This document shows positions 1-31,876 of a stretch of DNA of 32,633 bases, piece by piece. Under the pieces are notes generated by a model, which was not told the DNA's origin, did not search any database, and saw only the letters and a program-made list of their open reading frames with translations. How positions within the stretch are numbered: position 1 is the first letter of the stretch; each line of letters opens with the position of its first letter. The stretch is from Octopus bimaculoides (taxonomy: Eukaryota). Made by a program: the position numbers and the translations under genes. The stretch lies in assembly GCF_001194135.2 (NCBI RefSeq), contig NC_068982.1, positions 100,542,844 through 100,575,476 of the forward strand, written 5' to 3'.

Positions 1-957
1 TAAGTTGGTGAATGCTGCCATAATCCTTGCCTTCAGTTCATCTTTGTTGTTGCAAGGAGTTTTGTTGGTCTCTCGCTCAACTGCGCCCCACACATAATAA
101 TCAAGGCGGATCCAGTCTGGGGAGTTATCTGGCCAGATGTTAGGGATGATGTAGTCGAGATAAATTGTCTGACAGCTATGACTAGGTTCTCCTGCTTGTG
201 TGGCAGGGTGCAGAATCCTGTTGCCAGACATAGGGTTTTCCGGTAGCCATCATCTTGACCCAGGGCAGTACTCCAAGCACTTGATGTGGGCCTCCGTTTT
301 GAGTCTGAGGCCGTGTGGGAAGATGAACGGAGGCATAACGTCACCATCACTAATGATCACTTCAAACATCATGATGTTGACTAGTTGTTTGATGTTTATC
401 GCTCTCAGTACATGTTTTGGAGACACGGCAAGCCAACAGTTGTTCTATGTGTTCACCATCTGATCCTGTCAGAAATTTTTCACGTCTGAGAAAAACCAAA
501 GCATGTTCGGTTGGAAGGTACGCTTGAGTTTGTTCTAAAGCTTCGTAGTGCGTTCTTTTCTCTTGTCCTTGAGGGCTTAGGATAAAAATTGACCTTTTCT
601 CATCTTGCATGAGGAATACCGAATGTCTTCATGCACTACCTGCCGGATAAGAAACTCAGACACACCCATGTCCCTGGCGATGGATCTGATTGGCTTGGAG
701 GAATCGTTGTTAATCATGACCTGGATCTCACCAACAAATTCAGGAGTTCTTTTCTTATCAGAATGATCAGAGTGAGTTTTCCGAGCTGCCATACCTTCGT
801 AATCATCATTAGATACATCCAACTCTTTCCAAATCCTCTACACTGTCCTCAGATTGACACCCAGATACTCTGAAATGTTAGTACTGAAGCTTCCGGCGCG
901 AATTCCAAGCAGTACAGCATGTCGTTTCCAAATTTCTGGCAGAGAGAAATGCGTCAA
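1..957 (-). pseudogene. DD37D transposase pseudogene
   Basis: Manual translation across stops and frameshifts: HTH region (LPEIWKRHAVLLGIRAG...GVNLRTV*RIW; KPIRSIARDMGVSEFLIRQVVHED), LWFFSDVKNF (D1), PYVWQQDSAPCHT (D2, 215-217), IWPDNSPDWIRLDYYVWGAVE (D3, 100-102). D2-D3 gap is 112 nt = 37 codons + 1 nt. Confidence 0.9.
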
Positions 958-1088
958 AGTGCTGTTTTTCTCATAGACAGTGCCCAATTGACCCTACTAT
1001 ACTCTGTAGTCGACAAAATCAAAAGCAAACAATGAGCATGCACGCGTGCTGTGCAGATAATGTCAGACTGACTTGGTGCCTGAATCTT
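1..1088 (-). mobile_element. Tc1/mariner DNA transposon, DD37D (maT/Bmmar1-like), decayed; 3' end lies outside the window
   Basis: Contains the transposase remnant below. Probable left TIR region at ~1058-1088 abuts a (TA)n run, consistent with a TA target. TIR limits are uncertain because the other end is not in the window. Confidence 0.85.
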
Positions 1089-1242
1089 ATATATATATAC
1101 ATACACACANNNNNNNNNNNNNNNNNNNNNNNNNNNNNNNNNNNNNNNNNNNNNNNNNNNNNNNNNNNNNNNNNNNNNNNNNNNNNNNNNNNNNNNNNNN
1201 NNNNNNNNNNNNNNNNNNNNNNNNNNNNTATATATATATATA

Positions 1243-1322
1243 CCACGTGCTTCTTTCAGTTTCCGTCTAACAAATTCACTCACAAGGCTTTGGTCGGCTC
1301 GAGGCTATAATAGAAGGTACTT
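1243..1322 (-). mobile_element. SINE family A fragment
   Basis: Matches 7195-7272 (cttctttcagtttccgtct...cacaaggctttggtcggc.cgaggctat). Borders an AT microsatellite and a gap. Confidence 0.8.
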
Positions 1323-1394
1323 TCTCAAAATATCGTTTATAATTTAACTATCAATAAAAGTGAAAAACAATTCGTGAGATCAAACTGATGCAAG

Positions 1395-6959: not shown

Positions 6960-7356
6960 CTTTTACTCCTTTAGTTGTTTCAGTCATTTGACTGCGGCCA
7001 TGCTGGAGCACTGCTTTTAGTCGAGCAAATCGATCCCAGGACTTACGCTTTGTAAGCTTAGTACTTATTCTATCGGTCTCTTTTGCCGAACCGCTAAGTT
7101 ACGGGGACGTAAACACACCAGCATCGGTTGTCAAGTGATGTTGGGGGGACAAACACAGAAATACAAAACACACACATACATATATATATATATACGACGG
7201 GCTTCTTTCAGTTTCCGCCTACCAAATTCACTCACAAGGCTCTGGTCGGCCCGAGGCTATTGTAGAAGACACTTGCCCAAAGTGCCACGCTGTGGGACTG
7301 AACCCGGAACCACGTGGTTGGTAAGCAAGCTACTTACCACACAGCCACTCCTGCTC
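6960..7356 (-). mobile_element. SINE family A, full length
   Basis: Head AGGAGTGGCTGTGTGG (A-box-like)...GGGTTCAGTCCC (B-box-like), then CTTTGGGCAAGTGTCTT, an internal AT/GT microsatellite and a CAGTC-AAAT-GACTG tail hairpin. Direct repeat CTATCTATCT at 6950-6959 and 7357-7366. Homologous to 19970-20256 and 23115-23532. Confidence 0.9.

Positions 7357-9387: not shown

Positions 9388-9425
<38 letters not shown>
8876..9425 (+). repeat. Probable 3' end of an unidentified interspersed retroelement with an (AAT)n tail
   Basis: Complex non-coding sequence ending ...ctctctcactc followed by (AAT)n at 9384-9425. Single copy in the window, so repeat status is inference. Confidence 0.4.
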
Positions 9426-9426
<1 letters not shown>

Positions 9427-9574
9427 TTTCAAATTTTAGCACAAGGCCAGTAACATTGGTAGAAAGGTTAAGACGATGACATCGGTCCCAGTGCTCATCT
9501 GGTACTTTTTTTTCATCGACCCTTGAAAGGATCAAAGGCAAAGTCGACTTTGGTGTAATTTAAACTCAGAACGT
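9426..9574 (-). mobile_element. SINE family C, lacking most of the head
   Basis: Reverse complement aligns with 21355-21505. Confidence 0.85.
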
Positions 9575-9640
9575 AATCTGAAGGATTGAGACAAGATATA
9601 GATGATCTCTGATTGCAGCTGAGCAAACTTAAACACACAC

Positions 9641-9838
9641 GCGGCGAGCTGGCAGAAACGTCAGCACGCCAGGCGAAATGCTTAGCGGTATTTCGTCTGC
9701 CGTTACGTTTTGAGTTCAAATTCCGCTGAGGTCGACTTTGCTTTCAACCTTTCGGGGTCGTTATAATCGACTTTATCCGTTTGTCTGTCCTTGTTTGTCC
9801 CCCCTGTGTGTAGCCCCTTGTGGGTAGTAAAGAAATAA
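9641..9838 (+). mobile_element. SINE family C with internal deletion
   Basis: GCGGCGAGCTGGCAGAA head, GAGTTCAAATTCC B-box-like motif, tail ...CCCCTTGTGGGTAGTAAAGAAATAA as at 24446-24517. Confidence 0.9.
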
Positions 9839-10046: not shown

Positions 10047-10432
10047 GTGGAGGCGCAATGGCCCAGTGGTTAGGGCAGAGGACTCGCGGTCATGGGATCG
10101 TGGTTTCGATTACCAGACCAGGCGTTGTGAGTGTTTATTGAGCGAAAACACCTAAAACTCCACGAGGCTCCGGCAGGGGATGGTGGCGAACCCTGCTGTA
10201 CTCTTCCACCACAACTTTCTCTCACTCTTACTTCCTGTTTCTGTTGTGCCTGTAATTCAAAGGGTCAGCCTTGTCACACTGTGTCACGCTGAATATCCCC
10301 GAGAACTACTTTAAGGGTACACGTGTCTGCGGAGTGCTCAGTCACTTGCACGTTAATTTCACGAGCAGGTTGTTCCGTTGATTGGATCAACTGGAACCCT
10401 CGACGTCGTAAGCGACGGAGTGCCAACAACAG
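10047..10432 (+). mobile_element. SINE family B, full length, 12-bp TSD
   Basis: A-box TGGCCCAGTGG, B-box GGTTTCGATT, (CAA)n tail. TSD CTATGTGAAGGA at 10035-10046 and 10433-10444. Closely similar to four other copies in the window. Confidence 0.95.
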
Positions 10433-10436
10433 CTAT

Positions 10437-10760
10437 GTGAAGGAACATGGGTTAGTGGTTAGGATATTTGACTCACGATCGTATGGACGTGAGTTCGATT
10501 CCAGGCGGCATGTTCTGTCCTTGAGCAAGACATTTTATTTCACGTTGTTTCAGTTCACTCAGCTAGCAAAAATGGGTTGTAACTGTAATTCGAAGGGCCT
10601 GCCTTTTCACATTCTGTGTCACGCTGAATCTCCCCGAGAACTGCGTTAAGGACACGTGTGTCTGGGGGGTGCTCAGCCACTTGTACGTAAACTTCACGAG
10701 CCGGCCGTTCCAGTGACCGGATCAGCTGGAACACACACCGTCGTAAGTGACGGAATGCCA
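10437..10760 (+). mobile_element. SINE family D (older; own head, 3' half shared with B)
   Basis: tRNA-like head (GGGTTAGTGGTTAGG...GAGTTCGATTCC), CCTTGAGCAAGACA motif, then from ~10585 a diverged version of the B 3' half. Confidence 0.85.
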
Positions 10761-11956: not shown

Positions 11957-12324
11957 GTAGAGGCGCAATGGCCCAGTGGTTAGGGCAGCGGACTCGCGGT
12001 TTCGATTCCCAGACCGGGCGTTGTGAGTGTTTATTGAGCGAAAACGCCCAAAGCTCCACGAGGCTCCGGCAGGGTATGGTGGCAAACCATGCTGTACTCT
12101 TCCACCACAACTTTCTCTCACTCTTACTTCCTGTTTCTATTGTGCCTGTAATTCAAAGGGTCAGCCTTGTCACATTGTGTCACGCTGAATATCCCCGAGA
12201 ACTACGTTAAGGGTACATGTGTCTGTGGAGTGCTCAGCCACTTGCACGTTAATTTCACGAGCAGGCTGTTCCGTTGATCGGATCAACTGGAACCCTCGAC
12301 GTCGTAAGCGACGGAGTGCCAACA
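11957..12324 (+). mobile_element. SINE family B with 14-bp head deletion
   Basis: Aligns to 10047-10432. Possible low-complexity TSD at 11940-11956 / 12325-12341 (14/17). Confidence 0.95.
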
Positions 12325-13131: not shown

Positions 13132-13525
13132 ATTCTCTATTCTGTTGCATTATACACAGCAAAAGTGTGTTCACACTAATACGTTCATTCTCAACTCCGA
13201 CACTCACATATACAAACGTACATAGATAGATAGATACATACATACATACATACAGACAGACATACACATGTACACATACATACGTATACACAGATTCATA
13301 TATATGTTTGTAATGTTCGTATATATATTACATATATAACATATGTGTGTTTATGTATATGTAGTCATTCTTGTGTGTAAATGTCTACCTGCCTATTCAT
13401 TTCTCTATCTTTCTGCATATATACTACAATGTACTTGTCGCTTTGAGGTGTGTGATAAAGACAGGAATTCGAGGGCAGCGATGGAGTGAAGTTTCAGAAT
13501 TGAATAAAAGAATAAACTCAGTTTC

Positions 13526-13740
13526 TTATTTCTTTATTGCCCACAAGGAGCTAAACATAGAGGGGACAAACAAGGACAGACAAAGGGATTAAGTCGATTA
13601 CATCGACTCCAGTGCGTAACTGGTACTTAATTTATCCACCCCGAAAGGATGAAAGGCAAAGTCGACCTCGGTGGAATTTGAACTCAGAACGTAACGGCAG
13701 ACGAAATACCTCTAACGTATCTGCCAGCTCGCCGCCTTAT
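13526..13740 (-). mobile_element. SINE family C, 17-bp TSD, 21-bp head deletion
   Basis: Exact TSD AGAATAAACTCAGTTTC at 13509-13525 and 13741-13757. Confidence 0.95.
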
Positions 13741-18930: not shown

Positions 18931-18966
<36 letters not shown>

Positions 18967-18967
18967 A

Positions 18968-19034
<67 letters not shown>

Positions 19035-19385
19035 GGTAGTAGTAGTAGTAGTGGTGGTGGTGGTGGTGGTGGTGGTGGTAGTNNNNNNNNNNNNNNNNNN
19101 NNNNNNNNNNNNNNNNNNNNNNNNNNNNNNNNNNNNNNNNNNNNNNNNNNNNNNNNNNNNNNNNNNNNNNNNNNNNNNNNNNNNNNNNNNNNNNNNNNNN
19201 NNNNNNNNNNNNNNNNNNNNNNNNNNNNNNNNNNNNNNNNNNNNNNNNNNNNNGGTGGTGGTGGTGGTGGGTGGTGGTGGTGGTAGAAGTAGTGGCTGCA
19301 GTAATAATAGGAGTGGTGGTTGTAGAAATAGTAGTAGTAGTAATAGTATGGTGATGTGGAAGTAGTAGTAGTAGGTGCTAGTAGT
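18931..19385. repeat. Compound (GTA)n/(GTG)n trinucleotide repeat spanning a gap
   Basis: Visible directly; source of the poly-S/G/V/L/P ORFs. Confidence 0.95.
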
Positions 19386-19969
19386 AGTAGGGAATCTTTG
19401 GATATATCACTGAGACATAACTGAATAGCAGACCTTTCATGAAAACCGATCCGGTCGTGGCAGTACCGACATGCATTTAGAGACAATATATTTAATAATA
19501 GACCATCCATTTCCATTCAATTTAAGATAATACAATGTGATTCGAGATATGGTTAATATGGAGATATGGTTACTATTTCTGTCAGAACGACTGTGTCCCT
19601 TGGTAACACAGAACATCTGCTTCTGGCAGCAGATCAAATAAGATGATGGGGACAAGTCACACTAAGGAAGTGGGACCGGGACCGGCACCCTAGCAAACCC
19701 TTCCAAATTGGTGGATTTAGGTGGATGATGTTTAGTCTGTCCCTTTCTCCACCCAACGTCACCTCAATTTAGTTGGGTAGGGGTTAAAAAATATAGAAAT
19801 CAACTCAATGGGAAAGTAAGAAACTAAATGAAAATATTTGCTTGGCTTGGTATAACACAGATCTAACATTAAACTATATTTATTTTATGCATAACATAGC
19901 ATAGAATTTGAAATAAATTTCATCAGGACTGAAATAAGTTAAAATATTTTATTACACCCACGTTGAAGC

Positions 19970-20109
19970 TAGCTTGCTTACCAACCACATGGTTCCGGGT
20001 TCAGTCCCACTGCGTGGCACCTTTGGCAAGTGTCTTCTACTATAGCCTCGGACCGACCAAAGCCTTGTGAGTGGATTTGGTAGACGGAAACTGAAAGAAG
20101 CCCGTCGTA

Positions 20110-20152
<43 letters not shown>

Positions 20153-20256
20153 ATTTGTGTGTCTGTGTTTGTCCCCCCACCACCGCTTGACAACCGATGC
20201 TGGTGTGTTTACGTCCCCGTAACTTAGCGGTTCAGCAAAAAGAGACCGATAGAATA
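19970..20256 (+). mobile_element. SINE family A, 5'-truncated, runs into a gap
   Basis: Reverse complement of 7065-7335, with internal (TA)n at ~20108-20150. Confidence 0.95.
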
Positions 20257-20781: not shown

Positions 20782-21154
20782 TGTTGTTCGCACTCCGACG
20801 CTTAGGACGTCGAGGGTTCCAGTTGATTCGATCAACGGAACAGCCTGCTCGTGAAATTAACGTGCAAGTGGCCGAGCACTCCACAGACAAGTGCACCCTC
20901 AACGTAGTTCTCGGGGATACTCAGCGTGACAAGGCTGACCCTTTGAATTACAGGTACAACAGAAACAGGAAGAAAGAGTGAGAGAAAGTTGTGGTGAAGG
21001 AGTACAGCAGGGTTCGCCACCATCCCCTGCCGGAGCCTCGTGGAGCTTTAGGTGTTTTCGCTCAATAAACACTCACAACGCCCGATTTGGGAATCGAAAC
21101 CGCGATCCTATGACCGCGAGTCCGCTGCCCTAACCACTGGGCCATTGCGCCTGC
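20782..21154 (-). mobile_element. SINE family B, 12-bp TSD
   Basis: Exact TSD AGAGCAGGAAAT at 20770-20781 and 21155-21166; 10-bp internal deletion near 20926-20931. Confidence 0.95.
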
Positions 21155-21159
21155 AGAGC

Positions 21160-21861
21160 AGGAAATGGTTTGCGGTAAACGTGCCTGTACGTTCTGCGAA
21201 GTTATCTTTGCTTTTCATTCTTCCAGGGTCGATGAAATAAAGCACCAGTTAAGTACTGGTGTCAGTATTATCAATCATACCTCACCCCTAATTCTGAGGT
21301 GGAGTGCCAGCTGATAAAATCGTTAGCGTGCTGGGCTTAGCGGCATTTCGTTCGTCTTTACGTTCTGAGTTCAAATTCCGCCAAGGTCAACTTTGCCTTT
21401 CATACTTTCGGGGTCGATAAAATAAATACTAATTGAGCACTGGGGTCGATATAATTGACTTACCCCGTCCCTCGAACTTGTTGGCCTTGCGCCAAAATTT
21501 GAAACCAATACTATTATGTTTTTATATTATGAAACGAAATACTGCTGTGTTTCATTTCTCCAGAGTCGATAAAATAACGTACCAGTCAAATACTGGGGTC
21601 GATACCATCGACCTCAGGTCTTGTCTCTATACAAGAAACGTTTATTATTATTTCAAAATAAGTAAAGGCGGCGAGCAGAGAGAATCGTTAGCAATGTTCC
21701 ACCCGTCTTTACGCTCTGTGTTCAAATCCCGCCGAGGTCGACTTAGCCTTTCATCTTTTCGGGATTGATAAATTAGGTACCAGAGGAGTACTGTGGTCGA
21801 TGTGATCGACTTAACCCCTCCACCAAAATTTCAGGCCTTGTGCCTATAGTAGAAAGGATTG
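21160..21861 (+). mobile_element. Array of four same-orientation family C copies (~21160-21290, 21295-21515, 21540-21650, 21666-21861)
   Basis: The C core (GTCGAT(G/A)AAAT..TACCAG...CTGGGGTCGA, variably decayed) recurs four times. The last copy has a probable TSD at 21651-21665 / 21862-21876 (13/15). Confidence 0.85.
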
Positions 21862-22810: not shown

Positions 22811-23114
22811 ACACTCGCACAAACTCATAAACACGTACCTTTATGCATACACTTTTTAACAAGTAGGTGTGTGAATGTGTAAACAAGTATTTATCTATAA
22901 ACTATTAAATATAGATTACAGGAATACAACCGCGACGAAAATAACGCGTGCGAGAAAATCTTGTAACGCGCAAATTAATTTTCTCATTGATTTTCATGTT
23001 ATAAGGCGAGAATGTGTTCCAACGGAATCTATTTTTTTTTTCCTCTGGAAAAGAAAAAACTAATAAAAAATAAAGTGAAACCAAAAAGGCAACACCACCG
23101 CTTTTATGCCTACA

Positions 23115-23280
23115 GGAGCAGGCATGGGTGTGTGGTAAGAAGTTTGCTTTCCAACTACATAGTCCCGAGTTCAGTCCCACTGCGTGACACCTTGGGCAAG
23201 TGTCTTTTACTATAACCTCGGACCGACCAAGGCCTTGTGAGTGGTTTTGGTTGACGGAAACTGGAAGAAGCCCATCGTAA

Positions 23281-23322
<42 letters not shown>

Positions 23323-23532
23323 GTGTGTAGGAGTGGCTTTGTGGTAAGTAGCTTGCTTACCAACCACATGGTTCCGGGTTCAGTCCCTCTACGTGGCATC
23401 TTGGGCAAGTGTCTTCTACTATAGCCTCGGGCCGACCAAAGCCTTGTAAGTACTGGGGTCAATTCATTCAACTAAAAATTCAAGGCAGTGCCCCAGCATG
23501 GCCGCAGTCTAATGACTGAAACAAGTAAAAGA
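23115..23532 (+). mobile_element. Composite family A: older head + microsatellite + younger head + tail
   Basis: Two consecutive A heads (23115-23280 and 23329-23446) and a tail ending CAGTC-TAAT-GACTGAAACAAGTAAAAGATA. Confidence 0.9.
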
Positions 23533-23801: not shown

Positions 23802-24095
23802 AGGCGCAATGGCCCAGTGGTTAGGGCAGCGGACTCGCGGTCATAGGATCGCGGTTTCGATTCCCAGACCGGGCATTGTGAGTGTTTATTGATCGAAAAC
23901 ACCTAAAGCTCCACGAGGCTCCGGCAGGGGATGGTGGCGAACCCTGCTGTACTCTTTCACCACAACTTTCTCTCACTCTTACTTCCTGTTTCTGTTGTGC
24001 CTGTAATTCAAAGGGTCAGCCTTGTCACAACTGTGTCACGCTGAATATCCCCGAGAACTACATTAAGGGTACACGTGTCTGTGGAGTGCTCGGCC
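23802..24095 (+). mobile_element. SINE family B, runs into a gap
   Basis: Aligns to 10051-10345. Confidence 0.95.
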
Positions 24096-24400: not shown

Positions 24401-24615
24401 CGATTAAATAAGTACCAGTTATGCACTGGGGTCGAAATAATCGACTTAATCCGTTTGTCTGTCCTTGTTTGTCCCCTCTGTGTGTAGCCCCTTGTGGGGA
24501 GTAAAAGAAATAAGAAGCGTTAGCACGCCGGGCGAATTGCTTAGCGATATTTCGTCTGTCTTTACGTTCTGAGTTCAAATTCCGCCGAGGTCGACTTTGC
24601 CTTTCATCCTTTCCG
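24401..24615 (+). mobile_element. Family C 3' half (24401-24517) fused head-to-tail to a truncated C head (24518-24615)
   Basis: ...AAAGAAATAAGAA|GCGTTAGCACGCCGGGCGAA... Confidence 0.9.
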
Positions 24616-26682: not shown

Positions 26683-27345
26683 CTAACTACATCTTTCTTT
26701 CTCATTAGCCCCATATACATAGATGCATGTATGCATGCACACGTACATACATACATACATACACACATACATACATATAGCTGTAGTGGGTCCAGCTAGA
26801 AGAAAAGGAAGCGGGGAGTCCACAGGCGAAGTTTTACTTTGATGCGCATGAAGAACTATTTATCTAAATTATTGTGAGTTTTCTTTTGTTTTCAAATTAG
26901 CCCNNNNNNNNNNNNNNNNNNNNNNNNNNNNNNNNNNNNNNNNNNNNNNNNNNNNNNNNNNNNNNNNNNNNNNNNNNNNNNNNNNNNNNNNNNNNNNNNN
27001 NNNNNNNNNNNNNNNNNNNNNNNNNNNNNNNNNNNNNNNNNNNNNNNNNNNNNNNNNNNNNNNNNNNNNNNNNNNNNNNNNNNNNNNNNNNNNNNNNNNN
27101 NNNNNNNNNNNNNNNNNNNNNNNNNNNNNNNNNNNNNNNNNNNNNNNNNNNNNNNNNNNNNNNNNNNNNNNNNNNNNNNNNNNNNNNNNNNNNNNNNNNN
27201 NNNNNNNNNNNNNNNNNNNNNNNNNNNNNNNNNNNNNNNNNNNNNNNNNNNNNNNNNNNNNNNNNNNNNNNNNNNNNNNNNNNNNNNNNNNNNNNNNNNN
27301 NNNNNNNNNNNNNNNNNNNNNNNNNNNNNNNNTATATATATATAC

Positions 27346-27380
<35 letters not shown>

Positions 27381-27587
27381 GATAGATAGATAGATAGATA
27401 GGTATGTATGTAAAAATATATGTGTACACATATGCACATGTAAATATACATGTTCATGCATACATACATAGATATATACATGCATGCATTTACACACACA
27501 CACACACACACACAAACACACACAGAAAGCAAACAACTGGTATCAATTTTGAACATGGCATTTATGGTTTAAACACAATTGTAGTGT

Positions 27588-27978
27588 TGTTATAATAGAA
27601 TTGTTGGAGTAGGATATATATCGCATAAGGAAGGGAGTAAGATGGCGTGCAGATAGTCTCTTACAGCTGTTTCCAGAATAACTGCAGCGAATGAAGATAA
27701 GCTTTCGATATAATAACCGGCTATATAGTCTTCAGAGAAGAAGAATAGAAAAAGATCTTTATAAGGAGATATTAATAGTTACCAGTTCTTCCGTCGTAGA
27801 AGAGAGAGATCTACTAAAGATCTTCCTCCATTCTTCCTGTCTAAAGATGGGATAGTCGGCTATTATATGAAAGATTATCTTCAGAAATGCACCATATGCG
27901 CAGCTGTTTTAGAAGCAATTGTACACCTTTCTCACTCATTTGTATGATACAGTCTACTCCAACAATTCTATTATAACA
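27588..27978. mobile_element. Fold-back / MITE-like element with perfect 25-bp TIRs (TGTTATAATAGAATTGTTGGAGTAG)
   Basis: 27588-27612 is the exact reverse complement of 27954-27978. Inner arms 27693-27761 / 27815-27882 match 55/69. Only a 2-bp GT/GT flank as possible TSD. Confidence 0.7.
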
Positions 27979-28476
27979 GTTACGTTTAAATCATAAATTT
28001 TATGCTCTAAATTGATGCAAATTGTTTGCCTGTTCATTCTTTCTTTCTGCTATATATCTACTTGCTCAATGATGAATCACTTATAGCCATTCATTGCTAG
28101 ACAACTATAACATCACATTTTTGCTTTAAATGCAGTTCAAGTGGGAGTTTTAAGTGGTAAACTAACCTGTGCACTTATTGTATATGCCTGTTACATTACG
28201 TCATTAGACGCGAGTTTAACTGTACACTATCTCTCCTCCCGCTCTCTCTAGATATAGGTAAATCAAAAATATAATCAGGAAAAACAACACAAGTGAAAAA
28301 GATGTACACACTGAATATATGAGATCGATGCACAGAGAAAGTTTAAGATGGAAAAAAGAGACAGGTGTGACGTTTCGAGCATGGTTCTTCGTCAGAAGGA
28401 GAAAAGTCCAGAAAAAAAAAAGAAAAGAATAATCCAAGAAAAGCACACGTGTCGTTACATGGCTGAAAATAACTGG

Positions 28477-28510
<34 letters not shown>

Positions 28511-29310
28511 ACGTACGCACTCGCACGCACACACATATCGATGGATTTGACTGAGTCCATAATTACTAAAACATATTTTACCAAGTAACATTGAAGTTAT
28601 GCCTTATGAATAAGTCTACGTCCATTACAGAGTCAAAAGAAAAACATATATTCTGCGTTGTTTAGTTACATCCCTTTTACCTTCTGCGTTTAAATCGACT
28701 GAGGTCTCCTCCATTTGTGAGCATGCTGTCCAAGATGTATGCCAGCTACTTTCGGTTCAGTCAATTATGTTCCCACCCCGCTCCCAATTCTCATCTTTAC
28801 CAAAGTTTTAAAATCATTAGCAAATCTGGAAATGAAAAGACTATGTAATACCCTTCAGTATTTAGTTTCGTGCTTTTGGCTGTTTCGGTTTCAAATCCTG
28901 CTGGGATAGAGTTACTCCTGAGATTCATAAAAATATGTAACCGACATTAATTTCTGGCTTTATGTTAATGCAAGAAATCTTTGTTGTTCTCGATTCTGTT
29001 CTCTAGAGCAATTCAATTATTCCATATGTCTTTGATAATGATATTTATGGTGGCATCAATCTTCTCTCTTGGATACCATGGGGAGTTTTGAACCTTACAC
29101 ATGAAATACGTTAAACTCTGGTGAATTATACAATGCCTGCCTTCATGCTAAAACGTTAATCTAGGGATTTTTTTTTGTTCTGGTATTGATTTACAACAAC
29201 TTTGGTAGAACCAGGAAGACTTAAAGACTAAATCATCTGTCATTATCATGATATATAATCTCAAAAAGATATTGATAGAACTAGAGATATAGATAGATAG
29301 ATATAGATCG

Positions 29311-29312
<2 letters not shown>

Positions 29313-29352
<40 letters not shown>

Positions 29353-29375
29353 GGAGAAAGAGATTGAGAGAGAAA
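29313..29375. repeat. (GA)n microsatellite
   Basis: Visible directly. Confidence 0.9.
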
Positions 29376-29992
29376 GGCACATATACACACACAGCAGCAA
29401 ACACGCATTAAGAATACTTCAGCTCCTTCTTAGCTACTTCAAAGAATGTACAAAGCTCACGAGAGACCCACAACGTCGTGCTGCTTCCCCACCAGGGACA
29501 AGACTGCTGCTGATACATATGCAGACAGCGAAGACAGCATAGAAACAGACAGCCGGACTTGATTGACATGAAGATGTTCATCAACATACTTCAATCTATG
29601 ACCCGCATACATGCTGTCTCCTCACTCAACTGTTTGTATCACTACTACTTTGTCCTCTGCACCTCGGAACTTGCTGGTTTTGTACCCCTCCTTCCACGCT
29701 TGTCAATTTAATCATTCCTCTCTTCCACCTCTTGAAACCCAAATTATGTTACCCTACCACCACTTTTGACCTGCACTAACCATTCCACTTCGTCCTTCTT
29801 CCTCGAAATATCAAACCACTGGAAAATCCCTCTCGTTTTATTTTAATTTTTCTTACAACTGTCAACTTAAACCATTCGTGACACATAACAGTGAGAGAAC
29901 TTAACCGATCGCTCATCATACTAGAAATAGCAGTAAAATTTCCCTCAAATTTCATCCTACTATTTTTTTTTAAGGAGTTAGTATGTTATCCT

Positions 29993-30380
29993 GTGGAGGC
30001 GCAATNNNNNNNNNNNNNNNNNNNNNNNNNNNNNNNNNNNNNNNNNNNNNNNNNNNNNNNNNNNNNNNNNNNNNNNNNNNNNNNNNNNNNNNNNNNNNNA
30101 GTGTTTATTGAGCGAAAACACCTAAAGCTCCACGTGGCTCCGGCAGGGGATGGTGGCGAACCCTGCTGTACTCTTTCACCACAAATTTCTTTCACTCTTA
30201 CTTCCTGTTTCTGTTGTGCCTGTAATTCAAAGGGTCAGCCTTGTCACACTGTGTCACGCTGAATATCCCCGAGAACTACGTTAAGGGTACACGTGTCTGT
30301 GGAGTGCTCAGCCACTTGCACGTTAATTTCACGAGCAGGCTGTTCCGTTGATCGAATCAACGGAGTGCCAACAACAACAA
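29993..30380 (+). mobile_element. SINE family B, gap in head, 25-bp deletion near the 3' end
   Basis: Starts GTGGAGGCGCAAT like the 10047 copy. TSD ATGTTATCCT / ATGCTATCCT at 29983-29992 and 30381-30390 (9/10). Confidence 0.95.
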
Positions 30381-30649
30381 ATGCTATCCTAGATACATCA
30401 CACCAGAAAATATGACTTCAGATTAAAGACTTGAACACCTTTATGTCTTAAGTCTGACCTTTGCTAAGCAACATCAACAACCCGTTTAAGTTCAGACAGG
30501 ATTAATTTGACACAGTATTATATATAATCTAATTGAGAACGATACATTAACTAAGTATAATAGACACTTTTCAATTTCCTGCGACTCAGTTTTACACTGT
30601 AGTTTCTTCACCGGACTGTAGACTAGATAATTACGAAGGATCATGTATT

Positions 30650-30864
30650 GGTTTCAAATTTTGGCACAAGGTCAGCAGTTTCAGGGGAGGTAGTAAGTCA
30701 ATTACATCGACCCTAGTGGTCAACTGGTTCTTATTTTATCGACTGCGACAGGATGAAAGGCAAAGTCGACTTCGACGGAATTTGAACTAGAGAACGTAAA
30801 GACGGACGAAATGCTGTTAAGCGTTTTGCCCGACGCTGCAACAATTCTGCCAGCTCGCCGACTT
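30650..30864 (-). mobile_element. SINE family C, older copy
   Basis: Aligns to the other C copies. Decayed TSD at 30633-30649 / 30865-30881 (13/17). Confidence 0.9.
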
Positions 30865-31505
30865 ACGGTGGATCACATATTTCTCATACAACGAGTAACT
30901 TTTCTCTGCAATGCTGTGGATGTACTGAGGAAGAGGATATATAACTTGAAAAAAAAATTTTCTGCTAATATTGCTGCAATAATTGCTTGAACGTTTGCTA
31001 CTCAGTTAGAAGCACAGTCGGTGGGATCCAATCACAAGTCGAGCAGAGACGATACCAGAGAGAGTAAATTGTCTGTGACTACAATTTAATTAAGAGACCT
31101 AATAAGCAGTAAATTGCTGAAATGAAATATAGTTATTCCAATATATATTCGTTATATACAAGCGATGTATATGCGGACACACATCATGAACACATGCATA
31201 CACTTACATAAGCGCCCACACCACATGTATAGAAAGAAACATGCGCACTCGCACACATACACACGTGCATACATATGTATATTTCTCTATTAATTAAAAT
31301 AATTTATTTTTCAGTTTTATTCGTGCATACATCCGTTTTTCTCTCTGAGTATTGACGTAATATCCGCCTAAACCAATCGCATATCATCTTATAAAAAACT
31401 CTTTTCCAGTGACAGACGCTTCTAAATTCACTTCATTATAATTCGGTTATATCTCTGTCTTTAAATAAAGTTCAATAAATATTTGTTCTTCACTAAACCT
31501 AGTAA

Positions 31506-31876
31506 AAATAGCAGCCAAATCTTTCTCAAAACACGTGCTGCTGTCATATATATCTACGAGGAAACATTAGATACTCATAGGACTTATTTGAAATCGCATC
31601 CAAATTTCCCTCAAAATATGTGCTACCGCCATATAACTATGAGAATACATTTGATACTTGCAGGACTTATTTTAAATGACAGCCAAATCTCCCTCAAAAT
31701 ATGTGCTACCTCCACATACCTACGAGGAGAACACATTAGATACTAGCAAGACCCACTTGAAATGACAGCCAAATCTCCCTCAAAATATGCGCTGCCACCA
31801 TATATCTATGGGGAGGATACATTGGATACTAGCAGGACCTTTTAGAAATTGCAGCCAAATCACCCTTAAATCACAC
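31506..31876. repeat. Minisatellite, 83-86-bp unit, ~4.4 copies
   Basis: Units start at 31506, 31591, 31674, 31760 and 31846; core CAGCCAAATCTCCCTCAAAATATG...CATT(A/G/T)GATACT..(G/A)GAC. Confidence 0.9.

What the first reader, a model, noticed from the sequence alone, without database searches (positions are those of the whole stretch)
27588..27978. 391-bp fold-back element: perfect TGT...ACA 25-bp ends, diverged inner arms, no canonical TSD
Seen: exact 25/25 terminal inverted repeat; inner arms 55/69 identical; weak similarity between them (shared ACAGCTG); 53-nt central spacer. Five inner mismatches would be A-C pairs in a plus-strand hairpin. Flanks give only GT/GT, with no 4-9-bp TSD or TA/TTAA. 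Established: TGT termini typify Ginger transposons and LTR integrase substrates, which normally leave 4-6-bp TSDs. Inference: identical ends with decayed arms imply recent mobilisation or selection on the termini. It may be an unclassified MITE or a hairpin-RNA locus (siRNA/ADAR). It is the most unexplained structure in the window.
Basis: partly seen in the sequence, partly recalled or inferred. Interest (0 to 1): 0.7.

Follow-up and report, generated by a model that had tools for sequence, protein, structure and literature searches.

The report
Decayed half-kilobase fold-back repeat
The 25-bp "perfect ends" are real, but they lie inside a longer, roughly 80%-matching 0.5-kb DNA palindrome in repeat-rich animal DNA, so this is most likely an ordinary decayed fold-back or MITE-like repeat and not a new transposon with TGT...ACA ends.

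Summary
The 25/25 inverted repeat at 27588-27612 / 27954-27978 is real, and so are the 53-nt loop, the inner arms at about 81% and the GT/GT flanks. The 25-mers are not termini. The inverted repeat continues outward for another 46 bp on each side (27529-27574 / 27984-28029, 37/46, z = 11.8 against shuffles). The true object is therefore a fold-back of about 500 bp, 27529-28029.

Outer and inner blocks are equally diverged (80% and 81%). In arms that similar, a perfect run of 25 or more turns up by chance 15-17% of the time. The 25-mer also contains the palindrome TTATAA, so TA, TATA or TTATAA can each be read as a target-site duplication. The claim of "no TSD" is therefore not decidable from one copy.

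Mismatches give G-U and A-C pairs equally on both strands (12:12). There is no Rfam match and no coding capacity, so nothing points to a selected RNA hairpin.

Control searches with the window's own abundant SINE showed that the DNA collections hold nothing from this organism.

Best reading: an inert, decayed fold-back / MITE-like relic. Interest is low.

The parts
27529..28029 (.). Whole fold-back (imperfect palindrome), about 501 bp. It may reach 27522-28033 through ACAG/CTGT with a 3-nt indel.
   Evidence: Global arm alignment: 247 columns, 171 matches, 81% identity over ungapped columns. RNA fold -185.4 kcal/mol, z = -11.9.
27529..27574 (.). Outer inverted-repeat block, left arm. It pairs with 27984-28029.
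   Evidence: 37/46 identical, ungapped. Score 47 against shuffles of 15.5 +/- 2.7, z = 11.8., I1.
27984..28029 (.). Outer inverted-repeat block, right arm.
27575..27587 (.). Left junction of 13 nt with no clear partner. The right side has only 5 nt here (27979-27983).
   Evidence: alignment (6-nt and 2-nt gaps).
27588..27612 (.). It contains the palindrome TTATAA at 27590-27595.
27954..27978 (.). Perfect 25-bp block, right copy. It contains TTATAA at 27971-27976.
27613..27691 (.). Left mid segment. It is poorly complementary to 27884-27953 or not at all ('bubble').
   Evidence: 46/79 with many indels. The similarity is not significant on its own: local p = 0.41 and 0.09, global p = 0.06. Identity is lower than in the flanking blocks, Fisher p = 0.001.
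27884..27953 (.). Right mid segment.
27692..27761 (.). Inner inverted-repeat block, left arm. It pairs with 27815-27883.
   Evidence: 14/15 plus 42/54, giving 56/69.
27815..27883 (.). Inner inverted-repeat block, right arm.
27762..27814 (.). Central loop of 53 nt.
27490..27525 (.). (CA)n microsatellite abutting the left end of the fold-back. It is context only. Its match to (TG)16 at 28478-28509 is simple-repeat similarity.

Best explanation
This is a single, old, non-coding fold-back repeat of about 0.5 kb (27529-28029) in the repeat- and microsatellite-rich DNA of an animal draft genome. It is most likely the decayed relic of a MITE-like / fold-back-type non-autonomous DNA element.

Shown:
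- Three collinear blocks of inverted repeat share one centre: outer 46 bp at 80%, a 25-bp perfect core, and inner 69 bp at 81%.
- These blocks are separated by poorly matching stretches and close on a 53-nt loop.
- There is no coding capacity, no known RNA family, and no strand bias in wobble pairs.

Inferred:
- The two arms descend from one palindromic ancestor and have drifted apart by about 20%.
- The 25-bp perfect core is the longest surviving uninterrupted stretch of the stem, by chance or through a short conversion tract between the arms. It is not a transposase-protected terminus.
- Today the element does nothing except provide cruciform / hairpin potential. If it lies in a transcript, it would form an imperfect duplex of about 240 bp that dsRNA-binding enzymes could act on.

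A nested variant cannot be separated from this with one copy. In that variant a younger unit of 375-391 bp, with a hidden palindromic TA/TATA/TTATAA duplication, sits in the loop of an older 110-bp palindrome.
For:
- Outer and inner blocks are equally diverged, 37/46 and 56/69, Fisher p = 1. This is as expected for one origin.
- A perfect run of 25 or more has probability 0.15-0.17 at 80-81% identity.
- The whole region folds as one hairpin, -185.4 kcal/mol, z = -11.9.
- The longest ORF is 54 aa, with no Pfam match and no protein homologues.
- No Rfam family reaches its threshold.
- G-U and A-C pairs are 12:12 on both strands.
- The surrounding 32 kb is packed with SINE-like repeats, a dead Tc1-like transposase and microsatellites, so this is a repeat graveyard.
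- Long inverted repeats are very common in animal genomes. LIRBase lists 297,317 with arms of at least 400 nt in 77 invertebrate genomes, after deliberately excluding MITE-sized ones such as this (PMC8728187).
Against: - No second copy was seen: none in the window and none in 41 kb of another species that carries the related Tc1. A transposon origin is therefore an inference from shape, not from demonstrated mobility.
- No target-site duplication is visible at the outer ends.
- Identity along the arms is over-dispersed. The mid block is 46/79, p = 0.001 lower than its neighbours. When those columns are counted, the 25-run has permutation p = 0.004. Simple uniform decay does not fully describe it.
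- Dfam/Repbase, the host genome and sequencing reads could not be consulted.
Confidence: 0.6

Rival explanations
1. Nested insertion. The reader's unit (391 bp; or 375 bp with a 17-bp TIR TAGAATTGTTGGAGTAG and a TTATAA duplication; or a 20-bp TIR with TA) is a discrete and fairly young MITE. It landed in the loop of an older palindromic repeat of about 110 bp (27529-27587 plus 27979-28029).
For: - The step from 25/25 perfect to a gap-ridden junction (13 nt against 5 nt) is abrupt, and the 80% block follows.
- The permutation p for the 25-run is 0.004 when all columns are counted.
- The mid segments are not significantly complementary, as is usual for MITE interiors.
- Palindromic TA/TATA/TTATAA parses are available.
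Against: - It needs two centred nestings. The sums of paired coordinates are 55558, 55566 and 55575/6, so all three blocks share one centre to within 9 nt.
- Outer and inner blocks have the same divergence, which would be a coincidence under nesting.
- Every one of the TSD parses is an automatic by-product of a palindrome inside a perfect inverted repeat.
- No other copy was found.
Confidence: 0.2
2. A local inverted duplication that is not a transposon. For example, a fold-back or template-switch replication error next to the (CA)n tract produced a palindrome that has since decayed, with a short conversion tract keeping 25 bp identical.
For: - It is single-copy as far as can be seen.
- There is no TSD at the outer ends.
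- The left end abuts a compound microsatellite.
- Outer and inner blocks are equally diverged.
Against: - The mid blocks are barely similar.
- Identity is heterogeneous, p = 0.001.
- No outgroup locus was available to show a one-arm ancestral state.
Confidence: 0.13
3. A functional hairpin-RNA locus: an hpRNA / small-RNA precursor or a dedicated ADAR substrate, whose 25-bp perfect duplex is under selection.
For: - The hairpin is very stable.
- The perfect 25-bp duplex is about the size of a small-RNA duplex.
- The run is unusual if the baseline identity is taken as 69-75%.
Against: - G-U against A-C is 12:12 on both strands, so neither strand's fold is favoured.
- No Rfam family reaches its threshold. 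The only weak hits are to plant MIR models at E of 0.02 or worse.
- The arms of about 240 nt contain large bubbles.
- If the host is a mollusc (a lead only), a survey of 32 molluscs found no dedicated endo-siRNA pathway (PMC12479628).
Confidence: 0.05
4. Assembly artefact: a chimeric or mis-joined palindrome in a gap-rich draft scaffold.
For: The scaffold has 11 N gaps. One of them (26904-27332) lies 197 bp to the left of the fold-back.
Against: The arms differ by about 20% and by many indels, whereas artefactual palindromes are near-perfect. The structure lies inside one uninterrupted contig, 27333-30005.
Confidence: 0.02

Closest known systems
[quoted passage not shown]
   Same: It is under 800 bp, non-coding and AT-rich. 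It folds back on itself, has an exact inverted repeat of 17-25 bp, and sits among other repeats.
   Different: Multi-copy status and a target-site duplication, which define the class, were not shown. The inverted repeat continues outside the supposed TIR. There is no match to the only transposase relic in the window, a Tc1-like copy.
Foldback (FB) elements of Drosophila and FB-like families such as Tetris (PMC4079207) and Tm1 (PMC3169594)
   Same: Almost the whole element is two long inverted arms around a short loop.
   Different: FB arms are built from tandem sub-repeats and are usually much longer. No tandem sub-repeats occur in 27529-28029. No 9-bp duplication was seen.
Long inverted repeats / hpRNA loci (LIRBase, PMC8728187) and inverted Alu pairs as dsRNA substrates of ADAR
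   Same: It has two arms and a loop, and if transcribed it would form a long imperfect duplex.
   Different: The arms are about 240 nt, against at least 400 nt in LIRBase. There is no evidence of transcription, small RNAs or editing, and no strand-biased wobble pairing. The arms are not copies of any dispersed repeat seen in the window.
Ginger / LTR-type TG(T)...(A)CA termini
   Same: The 25-mer happens to begin with TGT and end with ACA.
   Different: Those bases are internal to a longer inverted repeat. There is no 4-6-bp duplication and no integrase nearby.

Membership tests
MITE | Terminal inverted repeats at the element's ends | tested here: inconclusive
   A perfect 25-bp inverted repeat exists. 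The complementarity continues 46 bp further out, so the true ends are undefined.
MITE | Target-site duplication of a superfamily-typical length flanking the TIRs | tested here: inconclusive
   There is no direct repeat longer than 2 bp at 27588/27978 or at the outer ends. The TA/TATA/TTATAA parses are possible only because of a palindrome inside the inverted repeat.
MITE | Many dispersed, similar copies in the genome | not testable with these tools
   There is no second copy in the 32.6-kb window. The 25-mer has 0 hits in the metagenome, genome and viral collections, but the window's own abundant SINE also has 0 hits in the metagenome and genome collections.
MITE | Small size and no coding capacity | tested here: met
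   The size is 391-501 bp. The longest ORF is 54 aa. The longer neighbouring ORFs have no Pfam match, and there are no homologues.
Ginger / LTR-integrase-type element | Element termini TGT...ACA (TG...CA) with a 4-6-bp duplication | tested here: not met
   TGT/ACA are not termini of the inverted repeat. Only GT/GT flanks them.
Foldback (FB) superfamily | Long inverted arms made of tandem sub-repeats | tested here: not met
   Tandem Repeats Finder and the direct-repeat search report no arrays inside 27529-28029.
Tc1/mariner non-autonomous derivative (including the IR-DR type) | TA duplication at the ends, and ends similar to an autonomous Tc1-like element | tested here: not met
   There is no TA at the outer ends. 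There is no similarity to the window's Tc1-like copy or to its intact relatives L001-L004.
hpRNA / long-inverted-repeat small-RNA locus | Transcribed hairpin that yields small RNAs | not testable with these tools
Indirect evidence: there is no strand bias in G-U against A-C pairs, 12:12.
Known RNA families (miRNA precursors and others) | A match to an Rfam covariance model at its gathering score | tested here: not met
   There were 0 matches at gathering scores. In the permissive search the best hits on the fold-back were 22-23 bits, against thresholds of 75-100.

The most novel reading that the evidence does not exclude
The fold-back is a transcribed long hairpin whose 25-bp perfect duplex is kept intact by selection. 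It could be the source of a small RNA or a docking duplex for a dsRNA-binding or editing enzyme. The host may be a lophotrochozoan (possibly cephalopod) lineage that otherwise lacks a dedicated endo-siRNA pathway.
Probability: 0.05. Interest if true: 0.55.

Novelty: new member of a known kind. Interest (0 to 1): 0.17.

Why it matters
It matters little as it stands. It is one more unclassified palindromic repeat in a repeat-laden draft genome.

Its use is as a caution. The longest perfect stretch of an imperfect palindrome can look like a pair of transposon termini. A palindrome inside that stretch can hide a target-site duplication, or fake one.

It would become interesting only in two cases. 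One is that genome-wide copies show a discrete, recently active family. The other is that RNA data show a processed or edited hairpin.

Tried and rejected
- The look-up of sequencing runs and read laying (tried with run ids obtained from the look-up of encoding contigs) were both closed. No read depth, empty-site, RNA or small-RNA evidence was available.
- **25-mer in public DNA collections.** There were 0 hits in metagenome contigs, genome contigs and viral contigs. This is uninformative, because a 24-mer present in all five copies of the window's abundant SINE also gave 0 hits in the metagenome and genome collections.
- **Six-frame translation of the fold-back in the search for homologous proteins.** There were 0 hits. 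The same trick with the SINE returned only one protein, so that database does not hold this genome's spurious ORFs.
- **The look-up of encoding contigs with window ORFs** (54, 188 and 122 aa): none is on record.
- **Organism identification.** The Tc1-like relic led to Logan runs SRR24188319/20 and to the ENA assembly ERZ21867824. That ENA assembly shares no SINE with the window, so it is a different species. Accession numbers and sequence strings were not found in papers. A predicted chitin synthase (UniParc UPI00078A5774) carries an exonised copy of the window's SINE. From memory, SAM-domain chitin synthases and this style of SINE- and microsatellite-rich draft suggest a mollusc, perhaps an octopus. 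That is a lead, not a result.
- **Relation to the window's Tc1-like element:** none.
- **A larger palindrome reaching the (CA)n / (TG)n tracts:** this is only simple-repeat similarity.
- **Mid-block inversion (direct similarity):** CAGCTGTTT only, p of about 0.04-0.08, treated as chance.
- **Rfam mir-297/mir-466 hits** lie on the neighbouring microsatellite, below threshold, and are noise.

Full report
**Setting.** The window is a gap-rich draft scaffold of a eukaryote, evidently an animal. It has 11 N runs totalling about 4.4 kb and dozens of microsatellites. It also has several SINE-like families at 75-96% identity and a dead Tc1-like DDE_3 transposase at 1-1028 on the minus strand. No Rfam family reaches its gathering score anywhere in the window. 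No tRNA is called. The ten longest clean ORFs have no Pfam match. The finding lies in an uninterrupted contig, 27333-30005. It sits just right of a compound TA/GATA/CA microsatellite.

**Checking the observation.**
- The exact 25/25 inverted repeat TGTTATAATAGAATTGTTGGAGTAG at 27588-27612 / 27954-27978 is there. Shuffles of the window give no such pair.
- It extends to 29/32.
- The inner arms 27692-27761 / 27815-27883 match 56/69 with one 1-nt indel.
- The loop is 53 nt.
- The inner block gives five A-C pairs on the plus strand, and the flanks are GT/GT.

The inverted repeat does not stop at 27588/27978.
- A gapped alignment of the left half against the reverse complement of the right half runs outward to 27522-27529 and 28029-28033.
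- The ungapped repeat search finds the same outer pair (I1).
- The outer block, 27529-27574 against 27984-28029, is 37/46 identical. Its local score is 47. In 2000 dinucleotide shuffles the score is 15.5 +/- 2.7 with a maximum of 30, so z = 11.8.
- Beyond that, only (CA)n / (TG)n similarity remains.

The object is therefore a fold-back of about 501 bp, and the 'TGT...ACA ends' are internal to it. Folded as RNA, 27520-28040 forms one long hairpin of -185.4 kcal/mol, z = -11.9.

**Anatomy.** The global arm alignment has 247 columns, 171 matches and 35 gap columns, with 81% identity over ungapped columns. There are three collinear blocks of real complementarity:

| Block | Coordinates | Identity |
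|---|---|---|
| Outer | 27529-27574 / 27984-28029 | 37/46 |
| Core | 27588-27612 / 27954-27978 | 25/25 |
| Inner | 27692-27761 / 27815-27883 | 56/69 |

- Between the outer block and the core is a 13-nt / 5-nt junction.
- Between the core and the inner block is a 'bubble', 27613-27691 against 27884-27953. Its similarity is not significant on its own: local p = 0.41 and 0.09, global p = 0.06.
- The bubble's identity is lower than that of its neighbours, Fisher p = 0.001.
- The sums of paired coordinates for the three blocks are 55558, 55566 and 55575/6. All three blocks share one centre to within 9 nt.

**Is the perfect 25-mer special?** The outer and inner blocks on either side of it are equally diverged, 80% and 81%, Fisher p = 1. 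Simulated arms give these probabilities for a perfect run of 25 or more:

| Arm identity | P(run of 25 or more) |
|---|---|
| 80-81% | 0.15-0.17 |
| 75% | 0.04 |
| 69% (all gap columns counted as mismatches) | 0.006 |

Permuting the observed columns gives p = 0.0044. That makes the run at most mildly unusual, and it does not by itself show selection or recent mobilisation. A short conversion tract between the arms would explain it equally well; that is an inference.

**Target-site duplication.** Positions 3-8 of the 25-mer are the palindrome TTATAA. The same bases can therefore be read as:
- a 17-bp TIR (TAGAATTGTTGGAGTAG) with a 6-bp TTATAA duplication;
- an 18-bp TIR with TATA;
- a 20-bp TIR with TA.

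These parses follow automatically from a palindrome inside a perfect inverted repeat. They are neither evidence for a duplication nor grounds for saying there is none.

**RNA hairpin?**
- Each transition between the arms gives G-U on one strand and A-C on the other. Selection for a fold on one strand should bias this. The count is 12 G-U and 12 A-C on either strand. The five A-C pairs in the inner block are offset elsewhere in the stem.
- The permissive Rfam search gives only 22-23-bit hits to plant MIR models on the inner hairpin, against thresholds of 75-100. The stronger mir-297/466 hits lie on the neighbouring microsatellite.
- The longest ORF is 54 aa.

Nothing supports a selected RNA or a peptide.

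**Copy number, the decisive test, could not be done.**
- There is no second copy in the window, by pattern search with 3 mismatches, by word-7 BLASTN or by self-BLAST.
- The 25-mer has no exact match in the metagenome, prokaryotic-genome or viral collections.
- I ran controls. A 24-mer shared by all five copies of the window's commonest SINE also has no match in the metagenome and genome collections. Those collections therefore hold no DNA of this organism.
- A six-frame translation of the fold-back found no protein. The same query built from the SINE found only one, a predicted chitin synthase with an exonised SINE piece.
- Window ORFs are not on record in the contig index.
- 41 kb of another species that carries the related Tc1 has no similarity to the fold-back.

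**Explanation.** I commit to this reading at about 0.6: an inert, decayed fold-back repeat of single palindromic origin. It is most likely a MITE-like or fold-back-type non-autonomous DNA element, and its 25-bp core is the best-preserved piece of stem.
- For it: the common centre of the three blocks, the equal divergence of the outer and inner blocks, the absence of any functional signal, and the repeat-graveyard setting.
- Context: such structures are commonplace. LIRBase lists 297,317 long inverted repeats with arms of at least 400 nt in 77 invertebrate genomes, after filtering out MITE-sized ones like this (PMC8728187).
- Against it: no second copy, no duplication at the outer ends, and over-dispersed identity along the arms.

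**Rivals.**
- About 0.2: a younger unit of 375-391 bp nested in the loop of an older 110-bp palindrome.
- About 0.13: a non-transposon local inverted duplication, for example by template switching beside the (CA)n tract.
- About 0.05: a functional hairpin RNA. If the host is a mollusc, a survey of 32 molluscs found no dedicated endo-siRNA pathway (PMC12479628). That would weaken the siRNA version but not an editing-substrate version.
- About 0.02: an assembly artefact, unlikely because the arms differ by about 20% and by many indels.

**Comparison with known kinds.** It works like a MITE or fold-back, or like an inverted-repeat dsRNA source. Membership in any named family is not established.
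- The two defining MITE features, copies and duplication, were untestable or inconclusive.
- The Ginger/LTR-type terminus test, the FB sub-repeat test, the Tc1/mariner test and the Rfam test were all run and not met.

**Verdict.** The sequence feature is real, with mis-set boundaries and an over-read interpretation. It is probably an ordinary, unclassified palindromic repeat. Interest is low unless genome-wide or RNA data say otherwise.

**Organism.** It was not identified. 'Mollusc / cephalopod' is only a lead from memory, prompted by the SAM-domain chitin synthase that shares the window's SINE.

Noticed in passing
window 1-1028 (- strand): This is a decayed Tc1-like (HTH_Tnp_Tc3_2 / DDE_3) transposase with in-frame stops and a frameshift. 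It runs off the window start. It is 84% identical in DNA to contigs carrying an intact 349-aa ORF in Logan runs SRR24188319/20, and 77-80% identical to copies in ENA assembly ERZ21867824. It is unrelated to the fold-back.
   Followed up: partly
window 10051-10431, 11990-12324, 20782-21152(-), 23802-24095, 30100-30364 (older copy 10576-10760): This is a very abundant SINE-like family of about 335-380 bp at 90-96% identity, with 5-6 copies in 32 kb. ARAGORN calls no tRNA in it. A 48-residue piece is exonised, at 81-97% identity, in a predicted SAM-domain chitin synthase (P0064, UniParc UPI00078A5774). That protein is the only pointer to the host organism.
   Followed up: partly
window 1229-1329, 7066-7335, 19966-20256(-), 23114-23451(-); and 9400-9838, 13523-13715, 21335-21819, 24405-24613, 30645-30860: These are two further dispersed repeat families, at 75-93% identity between copies. 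They are often adjacent to microsatellites or assembly gaps.
   Followed up: no
window 31497-31874: This is a tandem repeat with an 86-bp unit (4.2 copies) and a 169-bp higher-order period, at 75-77% matches.
   Followed up: no
window 27394-27514: There are sub-threshold Rfam hits to mir-297 and mir-466 (34-51 bits against gathering scores of 85-90) on both strands of a TA/TG/CA-type compound microsatellite. They are low-complexity matches, not miRNA genes.
   Followed up: yes
window 18931-19374: There are (GTA)n / (GGT)n-type trinucleotide arrays on both sides of an N gap. They give long homopolymeric-amino-acid ORFs on both strands. No coding evidence was sought.
   Followed up: no
whole window: About 13.5% of the window is N, in 11 gaps of 10-887 bp. 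Most gaps are bordered by microsatellites. The assembly therefore breaks at simple repeats, and distances across gaps, including the one 197 bp left of the fold-back, are estimates.
   Followed up: no
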